Origin: Octopus sinensis
Lineage: Eukaryota
Direction of reading: 5' to 3'
DNA: 12,089 nucleotides
Assembly (NCBI RefSeq): GCF_006345805.1
Contig: NW_021826792.1
Coordinates: 1 to 12,089, forward strand
Shown: positions 2,707-10,806 of the stretch, piece after piece
How positions within the stretch are numbered: the stretch's first letter is position 1
Layout of the letters: every line of letters starts with the position of its first letter
Position numbers and translations under genes: made by a program
Notes under the pieces: model-generated
Told to the model about the DNA's origin: nothing
The model's database searches: none
Seen by the model: only the letters and a program-made list of their open reading frames with translations

Positions 2707-2804
2707 GTTTAAAATTTACCTGATGATGGCGGTGATTTGTTAATAATGCAATCAAGGAATGCATCGATTAAATCCTGCCGAAACAGCTGTTGTGAATTTT
2801 GAAC
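2707..2804 (+). ncRNA. Type I hammerhead ribozyme motif (HHR-1), palindromic helix III
   Basis: Helix I GTTTAAAATTTAC (2707-2719) pairs with GTGAATTTTGAAC (2792-2804), 13 bp including 2 G.U. Core CTGATGA 2720-2726, extra U 2727. Helix II GGCGG (2728-2732)/CTGCC (2775-2779), extended by GATT/AATC, TAAT/ATTA and ATGCA/TGCAT. GAAA 2780-2783. Helix III palindrome ACAGCTGT 2783-2790. GUU triplet, predicted cut after 2791. Confidence 0.85.
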
Positions 2805-2825
2805 CCCACTTGTGTCCTTCTTAAC

Positions 2826-2884
<59 letters not shown>
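2826..2884. repeat. (TA)n microsatellite
   Basis: Direct reading. Confidence 0.95.
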
Positions 2885-2926
2885 AGTTTCTTTATTGGCC
2901 ACACAGGGCTGCACACAGATGGGAAT

Positions 2927-2992
2927 CATACATACATACATACATACATACATACATACATACATACATACATACATACATACATACATACA
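2927..2992. repeat. (CATA)16 microsatellite
   Basis: Perfect tetranucleotide run. Confidence 0.95.
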
Positions 2993-3109
2993 GTTAATCA
3001 AATATATTCTTTGAGAATAAAGTGTACTAGATATTTCAGATAAGTGCTCTTAATATGATAAATTTCTAAAACCTTAAAGGTATTTACAGAATCAATTAGA
3101 GCGATTTTA

Positions 3110-3600
3110 TATTAGAAAGTAAAAGCTGGAAAAATTACAGCATAAAAATCACAATAGAGATACGTCCATAATATAAATAGCATTGTATTAACAAATAAAT
3201 ATATATAAAGTAAAACTATGATAATTTTAAAAGGTTTGAGATAACTTACGATCGTTTCATGGATGTGTTTCCTTTCGAAATGAAACCCAAAACTGATAAT
3301 CATTATTAGGTAGCACATCCACTCATCAGGAAAAAGGATGAATTTCAGTGTAGTCAATAGAATGATAGAGATGCTAATTTAAAATCGTGTGATAAAGGTG
3401 TTGCGTAAATGATTATCAATTTTGGATTTCATTTCGAAATGAAGCATTTACATGAAACGATCGTAAGATATCTCAAACCCTTAAAAATTATCATAGTTAT
3501 ATTTTATATATTCATTTATTAATACGATACCGTTTATATTATGGACGTATCTCTGTTCTGATTTTTATGGTGTAATTTTTCCTGCGTTTACTTTCTAATA
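3110..3600. mobile_element. Fold-back element: ~195-bp inverted arms with ~100-bp spacer (MITE, or inverted pair of retroelement ends)
   Basis: Arm 3110-3305 is the reverse complement of ~3407-3600 at roughly 85-90% by eye. Ends read TA|TATTAGAAAG...CTTTCTAATA|TA. Confidence 0.85.
3247..3329 (-). ncRNA. Hammerhead-like core (HHR-2) without a recognisable helix I
   Basis: On minus: CTGATGA (3329-3323), G.U plus perfect 8-bp helix II TGGATGTG/CACATCCA (3321-3314 with 3267-3260), GAAA (3258-3255), palindrome ACGATCGT (3255-3248), GUA triplet. Upstream CCTTTTTC does not pair with downstream AGTTATCTC. Confidence 0.55.
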
Positions 3601-3623
3601 TACATGTGTGTGTGTGTTCATAT

Positions 3624-3850
3624 ACTCTTTTACTCTTTTACTTGTTTCAGTCATTTGACTGTGGCCATGCTGGAGCACCGCCTTAAGTCGAGCAACTCGA
3701 CCCCGGGACTTATTCTTTTGTAAGCCCAGTACTTATTCTATCGGTCTCTTTTGCCGAACCGCTAGTAACGGGGACATAAACACACCAGCATCGGTTGTCA
3801 AGCAATGCTAGGGGGACAAACACAGACACACACAAACACAACACACACAA

Positions 3851-3894
<44 letters not shown>

Positions 3895-4062
3895 TACGAC
3901 GGGCTTCTTTCAGTTTCCGTCTACCAAATCCACTCACAAGGCTTTAGTCGGCCCGAGGCTATAGTAGAAGACACTTGCCCAAGGTGCCACGCAGTGGGAC
4001 TGAACCCGGAACCATGTGGTTGGTAAACAAGCTACTTACCACACAGCCACTCCTGTGCCTAT
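3624..4062 (-). mobile_element. Full-length tRNA-derived SINE copy 1, with internal microsatellite and (AGAGTAAA)n-type tail
   Basis: Reverse complement of 4211-4670 at about 90% outside the central microsatellite. A-box-like TGGCTGTGTGGT and B-box-like GGTTCAGTCCC in the head. Tail AAGTAAAAGAGTAAAAGAGT. Confidence 0.9.
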
Positions 4063-4117
4063 GTATTTATATAATATATATGAGTGAGTGTATGTGCGCA
4101 TATGTGTGTGTAAGTGA

Positions 4118-4199
4118 GTCGTCGTGGCCGAGTGGTTAAGGCGATGGACTAGAAATCCATCGGGGTCTCCTCGCGTAAGTTCGAATCCTACTAGCGACA
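4118..4199 (+). tRNA. tRNA-Ser-AGA: tRNA-Ser(AGA), 82 nt with long variable arm; stem mismatches suggest a possible pseudogene
   Basis: D arm GCC/GGC; anticodon stem ATGGA/TCCAT with AGA at 4151-4153; variable arm CGGGG/CCTCG; T loop TTCGAAT; closely follows metazoan tRNA-Ser(AGA). Defects: C4123.A4193, A4178.C4188, two acceptor G.U pairs, discriminator A instead of G. Confidence 0.9.
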
Positions 4200-4203
4200 T
4201 TAC

Positions 4204-4210
4204 TTTTTTT
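4204..4210 (+). terminator. RNA polymerase III terminator (T7)
   Basis: Seven T residues starting 5 nt after the tRNA 3' end. Confidence 0.75.
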
Positions 4211-4391
4211 ATAGGCGCAGGAGAAGCTATGTGGTAAGTAACTTGCTTACCAACCACATGGTTCTGGGTTCAGTCCCACTGCGTGGCACCTCGGGCAAGT
4301 GTCTTCTACTATAGCCTCGGGCCGACCAAAGCTCGTGAGTGGATTTGGTAGACGGAAACTGAAAGAAGCCCGTCGTATATATGTATATGTA

Positions 4392-4427
<36 letters not shown>

Positions 4428-8334: not shown

Positions 8335-8383
8335 TAAGGTGCTTTTTATTCTTCGGCAAAAACGCCAGCAATAACTTGACCTT

Positions 8384-9366
8384 ACGGACCGGCGGACTGA
8401 CGGACTGACGGACTGACAGACTGACGGACTGACAGACTGACGGACTGACGAACTGACAGACCGACGGACTGATGGACCGACAGACTGACGGACTGACGAA
8501 CCGACAGACTGATGGACCGACGGACTGACGGACTGACGAACCGACAGACCGACGAACTGACGGACTGACGGACCGACGGATTGACGGACTGACGAACCGA
8601 CAGACCGACGGACCGACGGACTGACGGACTGATGGACCGACGGACTGACGGACTGACGGACCGACAGACTGATGGACCGACGGACTGACGGACTGATGAA
8701 CCGATGACCGACGAACTGACGGACTGACGGACCGACATACTGATGGACTGACGGACCGACGGACTGACGGACTGATGAACAGATAGACCGACGAACTGAC
8801 GGACTGACGGATCGACATACTGATGGACTGATGGACCGATGGACTGACGGACTGATGAACAGATAGACCGACGAACTGACGGACTGACGGATCGACATAC
8901 TGATGGACTGATGGACCGACGGACTGACGGACTGATGAACAGATAGACCGACGAACTGACGGACTGACGGATCGACATACTGATGGACTGATGGACCGAC
9001 GGACTGACGGACTGACGGACCGACGGACTGACGGACTGACGGACCGACGGACTGACGGACTGACAGACTGACAGACTGACGGACCGACAGACCGACGGAC
9101 CGACGGACCGACGGACTGACGGACTGACGGACCAATGAACCAAAGGATCGATGAACCGACGGACCGATGAACCGGCGGACAGACTGACGGACTGACGAAC
9201 CGACGGACTGACGAACCGACGGACTGACGGACTGACGGACCGACGGACTGACGAACCGACGGACTGACGGACTGACGAACCAAAGGACCGACGGATCGAC
9301 AGACTGACGGACCGACAGACTGACGGACCGACGGACAGACGGACTGACGCACCAACAGACCGACGG
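8384..9366. repeat. ~1 kb GACG/GACT/GACC/GACA tetranucleotide-based satellite with an 80-bp higher-order repeat
   Basis: 4-nt periodicity throughout. Units 8761-8840, 8841-8920 and 8921-9000 are identical except one base; 8682-8760 is a diverged 79-bp copy. Confidence 0.95.
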
Positions 9367-10114
9367 TTCGAGGGTAAGAGTGAGATTTGCAATCTCAGTC
9401 ACTGATATTCTTTAGAAACCGAGTTAATCCCAGTTCTTGTGAGACTTAAAAGGGTTCACAACAGATCCATATCATCAATGTACAAAAGCTAAACTGCTTT
9501 AACAATTTCTTAGCAGAACCTTCCATAGTTCCGAGCCTTTTTTTCTTTTCCTTTTCATTAAATTAAATTAAATTTATTTCTTCCACTCTTGAAATTCAAG
9601 TCAAAAAAAAAAATCCATTGTTCCAAATTAGTGTTCTAAATACATTTTTCTTCAGAATTATAATTGGAAGTGCATTTGGTTCTTCTTGTAATAGACTCAC
9701 TGACTGTTTATCTCGGGTTTACTTCGTCACTGATCATATTGAACTTCTTATGTATTAGCAATGAACGTCGAAGTCTAACTTAATTATCTTTTCTTTAATT
9801 CGTTTCTAATTTCGTTACAGATTACGTTCTGCTTGTTCCTTCATAAGTACGTGTGTTTTTAAGAACGTAATTTCTTAATTTCTGTTTTCGAAAAGGTAAA
9901 ACGATTTCGAGCATCAAACAGTAAAGTACAGGACAACATTTCAAAACAATTTGTTTTTCTTTTGTTTCGTTTATTTGTTGGGTTTTTTTTTTGTTTTGTT
10001 TTTTGGGGGGGTTTTCTGGGGTTTTTTTTTTTTTTTGGTTTTTTTTTGTTGGTTTGTGCTAAATTCAAATTCCGCAGGGATTGATTATACTACTTATTCC
10101 ACATAGAGGGTAGA

Positions 10115-10166
10115 TTCTTTTCTTTCAAATTTTGTTCTTTTCTTTCAAATTTTGTTCTTTTCTTTC
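10115..10166. repeat. 20-bp tandem duplication (~2.6 copies)
   Basis: TCTTTCAAATTTTGTTCTTT at 10121-10140 and 10141-10160. Confidence 0.9.
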
Positions 10167-10287
10167 TATGATTTTTTTTTTTAGCTTTTCTATTCCAGAA
10201 GGTGTCAAAGAATGATACAATTATGTTACTAATCAACATTTAGTGAGGTAATTTAGTTTGCGTACCTGACCTACAATACACACACGC

Positions 10288-10289
<2 letters not shown>

Positions 10290-10321
<32 letters not shown>

Positions 10322-10358
10322 TATATATTATATATATATATATATCTTATATAATATA
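10290..10358. repeat. (TA)n microsatellite
   Basis: Direct reading. Confidence 0.95.
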
Positions 10359-10398
10359 CAGTCAAAAATTGTGAAGCATGACTGTCACCACAACCACA

Positions 10399-10443
10399 TG
10401 AACCTGAAGATTGCATAATTTAATGCATGAAAGTACTTGTTTG
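10399..10443 (+). ncRNA. Minimal type I hammerhead-like motif (HHR-3)
   Basis: Helix I TGAAC/GTTTG (5 bp, 2 G.U). CTGAAGA 10404-10410. U.U opposition, then helix II TGCAT (10412-10416)/ATGCA (10423-10427). GAAA 10429-10432. Palindrome AGTACT 10432-10437. CUU triplet, predicted cut after 10438. Confidence 0.55.
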
Positions 10444-10565
10444 ACCCCTCTTATTTTATTTTATTATATTATATTATCTTATATTATATCATTATAAGAT
10501 TGTAAATAAAACGTGAAAATCAGACAAGGTTGGAATTCCTTTTATTAATATATATTTACATATAC

Positions 10566-10592
10566 GTGTGTGTGTGTGTGCGTGTGTGTGTG

Positions 10593-10629
<37 letters not shown>
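10566..10629. repeat. (GT)n microsatellite
   Basis: Direct reading, with two GC interruptions. Confidence 0.95.
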
Positions 10630-10634
<5 letters not shown>

Positions 10635-10695
10635 AGAGATAGCAGTCCCCTTCATCACACCATATAAACAAATTTTAGTTTAATACTTACTACTC

Positions 10696-10806
10696 ATTTC
10701 TCAGCTACACGTGTTTCTTGGGGTTCTTTTACGGTTCCTTAAGCACGCGGTGTTTTACAGGAACCTTTCTTAAAATGTAACCCCAATCATCAGGCCCCTA
10801 AGTAAC
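10696..10806 (-). ncRNA. Type I hammerhead ribozyme motif (HHR-4), palindromic helix III
   Basis: On minus: CTGATGA (10793-10787); perfect 8-bp helix II TTGGGGTT/AACCCCAA (10786-10779 with 10725-10718) with an inner 7-bp GGTTCCT/AGGAACC stem; GAAA (10717-10714); palindrome ACACGTGT (10714-10707); GUA triplet, predicted cut between 10706 and 10705. Helix I GTTACTTAG(GGG)C / GCTGAGAAAT has a 3-nt bulge and one mismatch. Confidence 0.78.

What the first reader, a model, noticed from the sequence alone, without database searches (positions are those of the whole stretch)
2707..10806. Four sequence-unrelated type I hammerhead motifs in 8 kb, each with its own palindromic helix III
Seen: outside the satellite I found seven CUGANGA heptamers on the two strands. 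Four are followed by a helix II closing just before GAAA, then a self-complementary helix III and an NUH triplet. The palindromes all differ: ACAGCUGU, ACGAUCGU, AGUACU, ACACGUGU. The helices share no sequence, so these are not copies of one repeat. Established: minimal type I hammerheads with a palindromic helix III cleave as dimers (newt satellite 2, avocado sunblotch viroid plus strand) and mark Penelope-like element terminal repeats and non-LTR retrozymes. Inference: several independent ribozyme-bearing mobile families are dense in this genome, and the different palindromes could act as a family-specific homodimerisation code. No Penelope RT or GIY-YIG ORF is present here, so these would be non-autonomous or relic copies.
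Basis: partly seen in the sequence, partly recalled or inferred. Interest (0 to 1): 0.88.

Follow-up and report, generated by a model that had tools for sequence, protein, structure and literature searches.

The report
Four solo dimer-type hammerhead motifs, octopus
Four unrelated stretches in this octopus DNA window carry a complete hammerhead-ribozyme signature of the dimer-dependent kind known from Penelope-like retrotransposons; they are real, but they are most likely leftover ends of old mobile elements and not a new kind of system.

Summary
Outside the 8-bp satellite there are exactly seven CUGANGA heptamers. Four of them are followed by a helix II, then GAAA, a perfect 6-8 nt palindrome starting at A15.1, and an H17 base.

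My own descriptor finds these four and nothing else. It gives a mean of 0.002 hits in 2,000 dinucleotide shuffles. It gives 0-1 hits for 539 decoy cores of the same composition on the real sequence. It gives 0 hits in 481 kb of unrelated DNA.

Helix I was not in the descriptor, yet it is 13 bp in HH1, 5 bp in HH3 and 3 bp (plus 5 after an internal loop) in HH4. HH2 has none.

The motifs share no sequence. No Rfam hammerhead model reports any of them, even at E≤10.

Repeats in the window match Octopus vulgaris and O. bimaculoides chromosomes. The architecture fits the heterogeneous, mostly solo hammerheads described for Penelope-like elements (PLEs): long helix II, a 1-2 bp helix III with a palindromic loop, one head-to-head inverted 5'-truncated pair, and microsatellites alongside.

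No RT or GIY-YIG relic, tandem copy or paralogue was found, and 41 kb of other octopus DNA holds no such motif. "Dense in the genome" and the "dimerisation code" therefore remain unshown. Verdict: new members of a known kind, of modest interest.

The parts
2707..2804 (+). HH1, complete type I hammerhead-like motif. Helix I is 13 bp (2707-2719 / 2792-2804). Predicted cleavage lies between 2791 and 2792.
   Evidence: Descriptor hit; coordinates checked. Helix I of 13 anchored pairs is matched by 0.3% of random placements. The MFE fold recovers helices I and II, z = -4.06.
2720..2726 (+). HH1 core box CUGAUGA (C3-A9), followed by unpaired U 2727.
2728..2779 (+). HH1 helix II: GGCGG / CUGCC (G10.1-C11.1 closing pair), extended by a further imperfect hairpin. 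52 nt in all.
2780..2791 (+). HH1 GAAA, palindromic helix III ACAGCUGU (2783-2790), and U17. Triplet GUU.
3247..3329 (-). HH2: core 3329-3323; helix II 9 bp GUGGAUGUG / CACAUCCAU (G10.1.U11.1 closing wobble) with a 46-nt loop; GAAA 3258-3255; palindrome ACGAUCGU 3255-3248; A17 at 3247. Triplet GUA. No helix I.
3108..3304 (-). Left (minus-strand) copy of the HH2-bearing unit, as the left arm of a head-to-head inverted repeat. Its 3' end is at about 3101-3108. The complete HH2 runs past this arm's inner edge to 3329 (see the HH2 part above).
   Evidence: Inverted repeats I2 and I3; alignment of the arms.
3408..3602 (+). Right (plus-strand) inverted copy, truncated at its 5' end inside the helix II loop. 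It keeps ...CAUGAAACGAUCGUAAG... but has no CUGANGA box. Its 3' end abuts (TG)n at 3603.
10399..10443 (+). HH3, the weakest motif: helix I 5 bp (10399-10403 / 10439-10443, two G.U); core CUGAAGA 10404-10410; helix II UGCAU / AUGCA (10412-10416 / 10423-10427) with a U.U at its base; GAAA 10429-10432; palindrome AGUACU 10432-10437; U17 at 10438. Triplet CUU.
   Evidence: fold z = +0.35
10693..10806 (-). HH4: helix I 3 bp plus 5 bp after an internal loop; core 10793-10787; helix II 8 bp UUGGGGUU / AACCCCAA (10786-10779 / 10725-10718) extended into a long imperfect hairpin; GAAA 10717-10714; palindrome ACACGUGU 10714-10707; A17 at 10706. Triplet GUA.
2826..2884 (.). (TA)n microsatellite, 35 nt downstream of the HH1 cleavage site. 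Possible insertion target.
   Evidence: PLE insertion bias for microsatellites is from PMC8557442. The adjacency is consistent with this but not statistically tested.
10566..10629 (.). (GT)n microsatellite between the converging HH3 and HH4 units. It lies about 75 nt downstream of the HH4 cleavage site and about 125 nt downstream of HH3.

Best explanation
The four motifs are the hammerhead-ribozyme parts of four unrelated, old, heavily 5'-truncated or non-autonomous retroelement copies. The elements are of the Penelope-like element (PLE) / retrozyme lineage, in an Octopus genome.

In an active element of this kind, two copies of the motif lie on one transcript (tandem pseudo-LTRs), or on two transcripts of the same family. 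They pair through the self-complementary helix III. That pairing builds two active sites, and each cuts after H17. This frees unit-length RNA with a 5'-OH and a 2',3'-cyclic phosphate, which is then reverse-transcribed.

The copies in this window are solitary, so they have no partner in cis. HH2 has no helix I, and its 3' half would be locked into a roughly 200-bp inverted-repeat duplex. HH3 is marginal. The copies are therefore most likely inert relics. HH1 is the best preserved and the most likely to cleave if supplied as a dimer.

Shown here: the motifs exist and are far beyond chance; they share no sequence; they have no coding partner, tandem copy or paralogue in the material I could reach.

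Inferred: PLE/retrozyme origin, dimeric cleavage, and present inactivity.
For: Real, not chance:
- 4 hits against 0.002 expected from shuffles.
- 0-1 hits for the 539 decoy cores on the real sequence.
- 0 hits in 481 kb of unrelated DNA.
- No hits with one core mismatch, so all four cores are perfect.

Features not in the descriptor:
- Anchored helix I of 13, 5 and 3 bp in HH1, HH3 and HH4. Matched by random placements at rates of 0.003, 0.02 and 0.08.
- H17 is never G.
- The triplet is GUH in three of the four.
- The MFE folds recover helices I and II.

Fit to the published class (PMC4209133):
- Helix III of 1-2 bp with a palindromic loop.
- Helix II larger than usual.
- Short helix I.
- An extra nucleotide after A9 (HH1, HH3).
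- Extreme sequence heterogeneity.
- Mostly solo motifs taken to be truncated PLEs.
- Pairs on opposite strands 100-700 bp apart. HH3 and HH4 are 349 bp apart (end of HH3 to start of HH4) on opposite strands.
- A U.U at the base of helix II also occurs in the axolotl HHR_Amex2 motif, whose retrozyme self-cleaves weakly as a monomer and much better as a dimer (PMC7229834).

Fit to PLE insertion habits:
- HH2 sits in two head-to-head inverted 5'-truncated copies that share one 3' end. This is the arrangement described for PLEs (PMC8557442).
- In a studied PLE, reverse transcription starts about 110 nt into the ORF, roughly 90 nt downstream of the hammerhead cut site (PMC11167929). That fits the 35-140 nt tails seen here.
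- The window has about 4 times the microsatellite content of the two other octopus loci, and PLEs favour microsatellites.

Host: the window's LINE and SINE repeats match O. vulgaris and O. bimaculoides chromosomes at 82-93%. O. vulgaris has an old PLE burst and 31 recently active PLE families (PMC13282606).
Against: - No RT or GIY-YIG relic next to any motif.
- No tandem copies.
- No paralogue of any unit, and no motif at all, in 40.9 kb of other octopus DNA.
- Family membership and covariation are untested.
- No Rfam hammerhead model reports a match at E≤10, even on stretches of 76-146 nt.
- The G10.1-C11.1 pair, described as highly conserved in the class, is present only in HH1.
- Helix II in HH1, HH2 and HH4 is a 52-69 nt hairpin, much longer than in published examples.
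- HH2 lacks helix I, and HH3 folds no better than shuffled sequence.
- Published PLE hammerheads cleave poorly in vitro even as dimers.
Confidence: 0.65

Rival explanations
1. They are monomer relics of small non-autonomous hammerhead elements (non-LTR retrozymes or SINE-like elements of the Schistosoma Sm-alpha type) and not truncated autonomous PLEs. Such elements are transcribed as multimers, self-cleave, are circularised by a tRNA ligase, and are mobilised in trans by PLE enzymes.
For: The units between flanking microsatellites are short, roughly 215-415 bp. That is the retrozyme size range of 170-400 nt (PMC7229834). There is no coding relic. A recent preprint derives animal retrozymes from PLE pseudo-LTRs (10.64898/2026.07.22.740005), so this reading overlaps with the main explanation.
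Against: Retrozymes are defined by tandem arrays, and none is present here. Retrozyme hammerheads are canonical, with short helices and loop-loop contacts, and would usually be expected to fit Rfam models. These motifs get no hammerhead match.
Confidence: 0.2
2. It is a chance or ascertainment artefact. The core boxes are short, the genome is AT-rich and full of hairpins, and this window was singled out because it happened to collect look-alikes.
For: HH3 alone is weak (5-bp helix II with a U.U, z = +0.35). No Rfam hammerhead match. No motif in 41 kb of other octopus DNA.
Against: Expected 0.002 per window. Assuming Poisson counts, my calculation gives P(≥4) of about 7e-13. That is still about 1e-7 after allowing for some 2e5 windows in a 2.7-Gb genome. 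Decoy cores on the same real sequence give 0-1. 0 hits in 481 kb of other DNA. Helix I was not asked for, yet it is present in three of the four.
Confidence: 0.04
3. One or more motifs are domesticated host ribozymes, for example an intronic hammerhead acting on a host transcript as proposed for the conserved amniote hammerheads, and not transposon debris.
For: All four cores are perfect while no single-mismatch copy exists in the window. HH1 has an unusually long and intact helix I and a strong fold.
Against: The motifs sit among microsatellites, SINEs, a LINE tail and a mariner relic, with no exon-like ORF nearby. They lie on both strands. No orthologous conservation could be examined.
Confidence: 0.04

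Closest known systems
Minimal / dimeric type I hammerheads of Penelope-like elements (Cervera & de la Pena 2014, PMC4209133; Lunse, Weinberg & Breaker 2017, cited in PMC6765202)
   Same: Perfect catalytic boxes. Type I topology. Palindromic helix III / loop 3 that implies action as a dimer. Enlarged helix II and short helix I. An extra base after A9 in HH1 and HH3. Great sequence heterogeneity. Mostly solo copies. Pairs on opposite strands. One inverted 5'-truncated pair.
   Different: No RT/GIY-YIG or pseudo-LTR context in the window. G10.1-C11.1 only in HH1. Helix II is a 52-69 nt imperfect hairpin in three of the four, not 6-8 bp with a small loop. HH1 has a 13-bp helix I. Helix III is the 2-bp-plus-tetraloop form, not absent.
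Newt satellite 2 and axolotl HHR_Amex1/2 hammerheads in non-LTR retrozymes (Forster et al. 1988, cited in PMC4209133 and PMC6765202; PMC7229834)
   Same: Helix III of 1-2 bp capped by a palindromic tetraloop. Efficient cleavage only as dimers. HHR_Amex2 also has a U.U at the base of helix II, as HH3 does.
   Different: Those sit in tandem arrays of about 330-350 bp, number about 1e5 copies, and keep loop 1-loop 2 tertiary contacts. Here the motifs are solitary, unrelated to each other, and show no recognisable loop-loop motif.
Drosophila virilis Penelope hammerhead variant (PMC4209133)
   Same: Escaped the standard descriptor. Bulge in helix II. Small palindromic helix III. Large helix II with a bulged base at its 5' end. 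Very short helix I.
   Different: The D. virilis motifs are nearly identical copies of one active family inside full elements. Here there are four unrelated solo motifs.
Rfam Hammerhead_1 and related Rfam hammerhead families
   Same: Same catalytic core and helix order.
   Different: None of the four gets a hammerhead match at E≤10. Routine annotation, such as the 235 'hammerhead 1' loci reported for the giant squid (PMC6962438), would miss them.

Membership tests
Hammerhead ribozyme, type I | Conserved core C3 U4 G5 A6 N7 G8 A9 ... G12 A13 A14, A15.1-U16.1 pair, H17 not G | tested here: met
   All four motifs have every core position and A15.1/U16.1. H17 is U, A, U, A.
Hammerhead ribozyme, type I | Helix II hairpin closing on A9 and G12 | tested here: met
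   9 bp (HH2), 8 bp (HH4), 5 bp after one unpaired U (HH1), and 5 bp inside a U.U (HH3).
Hammerhead ribozyme, type I | Open helix I formed by the 5' and 3' flanks | tested here: inconclusive
   13 bp in HH1, 5 bp in HH3, 3+5 bp in HH4, none in HH2.
Hammerhead ribozyme, type I | Site-specific self-cleavage after position 17 | not testable with these tools
   Needs transcription and cleavage assays of monomer and dimer constructs.
Rfam hammerhead families (Hammerhead_1 and relatives) | Covariance-model score at or above the gathering threshold | tested here: not met
   No hammerhead family is listed at gathering threshold or at E≤10. This holds for the whole window and for four small sub-windows.
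PLE-associated dimeric / minimal hammerheads | Palindromic positions 15.2-16.2 and loop 3, with no stable monomeric helix III | tested here: met
   Perfect palindromes ACAGCUGU, ACGAUCGU, AGUACU, ACACGUGU. Cofolding predicts an intermolecular helix III.
PLE-associated dimeric / minimal hammerheads | Unpaired nucleotide between A9 and 10.1, and a G10.1-C11.1 closing pair | tested here: inconclusive
   Both features are present in HH1. HH3 has the extra U but a U.U closing pair. HH2 has G.U and no bulge. HH4 has U-A and no bulge.
PLE-associated dimeric / minimal hammerheads | Lies in the pseudo-LTR of an element encoding RT and GIY-YIG endonuclease | tested here: not met
   No ORF of 60 aa or more lies beside HH1, HH3 or HH4. 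The one ORF across HH2 (3112-3357, 81 aa) has no relative and no Pfam hit in its frame. There is no Pfam hit in any frame flanking the motifs. Published solo motifs also lack this context, so failing the test does not exclude a PLE origin.
PLE-associated dimeric / minimal hammerheads | Tandem or inverted 5'-truncated copy structure typical of PLE insertions | tested here: inconclusive
   Present for HH2: head-to-head arms 3108-3304 / 3408-3602 with a shared 3' end. Not seen for HH1, HH3 or HH4.
PLE-associated dimeric / minimal hammerheads | Belongs to a genomic consensus family with compensatory changes in the helices | not testable with these tools
   No octopus genome collection is searchable here. 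40.9 kb of octopus DNA reached by protein look-ups has no paralogue. The metagenome 17-mer scan gave chance matches only.
Non-LTR retrozymes | Head-to-tail tandem repeats of about 170-400 bp, each carrying a type I hammerhead | tested here: not met
   No tandem array contains any of the four units.
Non-LTR retrozymes | [quoted passage not shown] | not testable with these tools
   Needs octopus RNA data.

The most novel reading that the evidence does not exclude
The motifs with long helix II (HH1, HH2, HH4) represent an undescribed cephalopod subclass of hammerhead-bearing non-autonomous elements. Its features would be a 52-69 nt helix II hairpin, an 8-nt palindromic helix III, and no match to any Rfam hammerhead model. 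The elements would target microsatellite-rich regions, and their different palindromes would restrict trans-dimerisation, and hence processing, to transcripts of the same family.
Probability: 0.1. Interest if true: 0.6.

Novelty: new member of a known kind. Interest (0 to 1): 0.3.

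Why it matters
The result shows that standard annotation misses hammerhead motifs of the PLE/dimeric type in a cephalopod genome. No Rfam hammerhead model reports any of these four.

It also shows that a simple descriptor with decoy-core controls separates them cleanly from chance.

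If a genome-wide run confirmed many such families in Octopus, it would add cephalopods to the animals whose genomes carry large, fast-diverging sets of self-cleaving motifs. It would also give material for testing whether different helix III palindromes keep families apart. On present evidence, though, this is an expected by-product of known retroelements and not a new mechanism.

Tried and rejected
- **Rfam.** Gathering threshold, then E≤10 on the whole window, then four sub-windows. No hammerhead family appeared. The E-value hits (mir-297 and similar) are microsatellite artefacts.
- **Extra copies.** Allowing one core mismatch found none. The U3-A8 core variant and a general hairpin-helix-III descriptor gave only low-quality hits.
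- **Paralogues by exact protein look-up.** Window ORFs, including the 81-aa ORF across HH2, are not on record.
- **Paralogues by protein homology.** The HH2 ORF has no relatives.
- **Paralogues by DNA.** The 17-mer CATGAAACGATCGTAAG gave 68 matches in metagenome contigs. None extends beyond 33 nt, so all are chance.
- **More octopus DNA.** The LINE-tail and mariner queries gave one locus each (L069 from O. vulgaris, L070 from O. bimaculoides). Neither has a motif or a copy of any unit. Two further look-ups (L071, L072) are JGI metagenome contigs that share only the mariner with the window.
- **PLE coding relics.** Pfam on all frames flanking the motifs found nothing.
- **Tandem (retrozyme) structure.** Absent.
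- **The 14-nt identity between HH1 (2777-2790) and the mariner relic (7397-7410).** Rejected as meaningful. The mariner copy has CTGGAGA, not CUGANGA, and no helix II (sequence).
- **Supplementary files of PMC4209133 and the paper by Lunse et al. 2017.** Not held.

Full report
**What is in the sequence.** The window is repeat-rich, AT-rich eukaryotic DNA. CTGANGA occurs 19 times on the two strands. Twelve copies lie in an 8-bp satellite, (ACGGACTG)n, at 8384-9349.

I wrote a plain descriptor. It requires CUGANGA; then a helix II of at least 5 pairs (G.U allowed) closing within one base of the core on either side; then GAAA within 100 nt; then a perfect palindrome of at least 6 nt starting at the last A of GAAA. 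All coordinates were re-read base by base.

- **HH1** (+, 2707-2804): helix I 13 bp; CUGAUGA; unpaired U; helix II GGCGG/CUGCC, extended by further pairs; GAAA; ACAGCUGU; U17.
- **HH2** (-, 3329-3247): CUGAUGA; 9-bp helix II with a 46-nt loop; GAAA; ACGAUCGU; A17. No helix I.
- **HH3** (+, 10399-10443): 5-bp helix I; CUGAAGA; 5-bp helix II inside a U.U; GAAA; AGUACU; U17.
- **HH4** (-, 10806-10693): interrupted helix I; CUGAUGA; 8-bp helix II leading into a long imperfect hairpin; GAAA; ACACGUGU; A17.

**Is it more than chance?** Yes, on every control.
- Two thousand dinucleotide-preserving shuffles of the window gave a mean of 0.002 hits and never more than one. Shuffling in 300-nt blocks to keep local composition gave 0.0015.
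- Shuffling destroys the natural hairpins of genomic DNA. So I also kept the real sequence and replaced the two core boxes with decoys of the same base composition. Of 540 combinations, 536 gave no hit and three gave one. Only the true core gave four.
- Random cores gave at most 3, and those came from TA-rich repeats.
- In 481 kb of unrelated contigs fetched for another purpose, with 267 CUGANGA heptamers, the descriptor found nothing.
- Taking 0.002 as a Poisson mean, my calculation puts four hits in one window at about 7e-13. That remains negligible after allowing for some 2e5 windows in a genome of this size. Ascertainment by the scan therefore cannot explain the finding.

**Evidence the descriptor did not ask for.**
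- Helix I, anchored at positions 1.1/2.1, is 13 pairs in HH1, 5 in HH3, 3 in HH4 and 0 in HH2. Random placements of the same geometry in this window reach these values at rates of 0.003, 0.02, 0.08 and 1.
- H17 is never G, and three triplets are GUH.
- Minimum-energy folds recover helices I and II of HH1 (z = -4.06) and HH4 (z = -1.76). HH2 (z = -1.23) keeps helix II. HH3 folds no better than shuffled sequence (z = +0.35).
- Cofolding two copies forms the intermolecular helix III in all four.
- Allowing one mismatch in the core boxes adds no further copies, so all four cores are perfect.

**Surroundings.**
- The four units share no sequence with each other or with the rest of the window, apart from the HH2 inverted repeat.
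- HH2 lies in a head-to-head inverted repeat with arms 3108-3304 and 3408-3602. The two arms end at the same outer sequence (...CTTTCTAATATA). The right arm begins inside the helix II loop, so it holds only the 3' half of the motif. The 17 bases CATGAAACGATCGTAAG are identical in both arms.
- HH3 and HH4 converge on a (GT)n tract. A (TA)n tract lies 35 nt downstream of HH1. The right HH2 copy abuts (TG)n.
- No tandem array contains any unit.
- The one ORF of 60 aa or more that overlaps a motif is the 81-aa ORF across HH2, which has no relatives. No frame flanking the motifs has a Pfam match, so there is no RT or GIY-YIG relic.
- The other repeats are a LINE 3' tail (2138-2554, minus strand), an internally deleted mariner relic (about 7140-7985; weak HTH_48 hit), SINE-type repeats and a tRNA-Ser gene.

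**Which organism.** A protein search with the LINE tail found one relative, carried on an Octopus vulgaris chromosome (GCA_951406725.2; L069). The mariner query found one on an O. bimaculoides chromosome (GCA_001194135.2; L070). The window's LINE tail matches L069 at 90.6% over 417 bp. Its SINE-type repeats match both loci at 82-93%. The window is therefore Octopus DNA.

**Is the motif dense in the genome?** This is not shown. L069 and L070 together are 40.9 kb. They contain no such motif even with relaxed limits (helix II of at least 4 pairs, palindrome of at least 4 nt), and no BLAST match to any of the four units. If density were uniform, the chance that all four fall in the 12-kb window is about 0.003 (my calculation), so the motifs are locally clustered. 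The window also has 11.4% perfect simple repeats, against 2.5% and 3.2% in the two other loci.

**Comparison with what is known.** The class was described by Cervera and de la Pena (PMC4209133).
- Most metazoan type I hammerheads have a helix III of 1-2 bp capped by a small palindromic loop, and they work as dimers. An 8-nt palindrome such as ACAGCUGU is exactly a 2-bp stem with a palindromic tetraloop.
- The PLE variants have a larger helix II (6-8 bp), a short helix I, and an unpaired base after A9.
- They number in the thousands per genome and are extremely heterogeneous.
- They occur mostly as solo motifs 'probably related to truncated PLEs', sometimes as pairs on opposite strands 100-700 bp apart.

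PLE insertions are typically 5'-truncated, often carry an adjacent inverted 5'-truncated copy, and favour microsatellites (PMC8557442). In a PLE studied in vitro, the hammerhead lies at the pseudo-LTR/ORF junction, and reverse transcription starts about 110 nt into the ORF, roughly 90 nt downstream of the cut site. Short 3'-terminal relics would therefore keep the ribozyme (PMC11167929). O. vulgaris has an old PLE expansion and 31 recently active PLE families (PMC13282606). A U.U at the base of helix II, as in HH3, occurs in the axolotl HHR_Amex2 motif, whose retrozyme self-cleaves weakly as a monomer and much better as a dimer (PMC7229834).

**Where these motifs differ from the published class.**
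- Only HH1 has the G10.1-C11.1 pair, said to be highly conserved. HH2 has G.U, HH4 has U-A and HH3 has U.U.
- Helix II is a 52-69 nt imperfect hairpin in three of the four.
- HH1 has an unusually long helix I.
- No Rfam hammerhead model reports any of them at E≤10, even when only 76-146 nt are searched.

They therefore cannot be filed under the Rfam families. The defining PLE context (RT plus GIY-YIG, pseudo-LTR) was tested and not found in the window. Published solo motifs lack it too.

**Most likely mechanism and state.** In an active element, two copies on one transcript, or on two transcripts of one family, pair through the palindromic helix III. This forms a double hammerhead, and each copy cuts after H17 (Forster et al. 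1988 and Lunse et al. 2017, as cited in PMC4209133 and PMC6765202).

Here each motif is alone. HH2 has no helix I, possibly because the copy is truncated at the ribozyme's 5' edge, and its 3' half would be buried in a roughly 200-bp inverted-repeat duplex. HH3 is marginal. I therefore read the four as relics, with HH1 the best candidate for residual activity as a dimer.

**The 'homodimerisation code'.** The energetics are compatible with it. Predicted helix III homoduplexes are -8.8 to -15.1 kcal/mol, against -0.9 to -5.7 for heteroduplexes. But any set of different palindromes behaves this way, so the difference is not evidence of selection.

**What could not be done.** No octopus genome could be searched. 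Copy number, family structure, covariation and the link to PLE coding sequence all remain open. Exact look-ups of window ORFs, a homology search with the ORF across HH2 and a metagenome scan with a 17-mer gave nothing useful.

**Verdict.** These are new members of a known kind, of modest interest.

Noticed in passing
window 4118-4199 (+), within 3624-4670: A tRNA-Ser(AGA) gene (49.4 bits) followed by a T-run. It sits in the loop of a roughly 1-kb inverted repeat made of two SINE-type repeats (arms 3624-4063 and 4211-4670, 78-97% complementary in segments). Infernal marks four non-canonical stem pairs (two in the acceptor stem, two in the T stem), so it may be a pseudogene.
   Followed up: partly
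window 8384-9349: An 8-bp satellite, (ACGGACTG)n, about 121 copies at 77% matches. It holds 12 of the 19 CUGANGA heptamers and creates spurious ORFs of up to 372 aa on the minus strand.
   Followed up: partly
window 3108-3602: If transcribed through, the HH2 inverted repeat would form a roughly 200-bp RNA duplex. In an octopus that is a plausible substrate for A-to-I editing or small-RNA production. This is inference only.
   Followed up: no
window about 7140-7985; L070 9932-11042; L071 5660-6961: An internally deleted mariner relic (weak HTH_48 hit). It is about 72% identical in DNA both to an O. bimaculoides copy and to a copy on a JGI metagenome contig (Ga0268261_10001666). The similar distance to a non-octopus contig hints at a widely shared or horizontally moving mariner lineage.
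   Followed up: partly
window 2138-2554 (-); L069 10168-10577: A LINE 3' tail with one frameshift, 90.6% identical to a copy on O. vulgaris chromosome OX597823.1. The one related protein carries a locus tag (llap_6084) whose prefix does not suggest Octopus, although the source names the organism as Octopus vulgaris.
   Followed up: partly
window 10698-10765 (+), opposite strand of HH4: A weak mir-124-like match (16.4 bits against a gathering score of 49; E = 0.21 for a 131-nt search). It contains UAAG-CACGCGGUG, which I recall as close to the mature miR-124 sequence (from memory, not checked). It was not reported in the whole-window search and is probably chance.
   Followed up: no
window 2777-2790 and 7397-7410: An identical 14-mer, GCCGAAACAGCTGT, in the 3' half of HH1 and in the mariner relic's HTH coding region (E = 0.028 within the window). 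The mariner copy has no CUGANGA box or helix II, so I judge it coincidental.
   Followed up: yes
window 10433-10451 vs 11497-11515 (reverse): The 19 nt just around and after the HH3 cleavage site match, in reverse orientation, the start of the SINE-type repeat at 11465-11815 (18 of 19 bases). This is either chance or a junction with a SINE fragment.
   Followed up: no
window 11465-11815 and 11864-12032: Two tandem copies of a 184-bp SINE-type unit (88% identical). They are followed by a short hairpin-forming inverted repeat (11864-11919 / 11977-12032, 88% complementary) that resembles a miniature inverted-repeat element.
   Followed up: no
window 1-500, 1057-1372, 6146-6619, 11048-11245 and others: Long (TA)n, (GATA)n and (TACA)n tracts produce dozens of sub-threshold Rfam miRNA matches (mir-297, mir-466, mir-3149 and others). 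These are low-complexity artefacts. Perfect simple repeats cover 11.4% of the window, about four times the share in two other octopus loci.
   Followed up: yes
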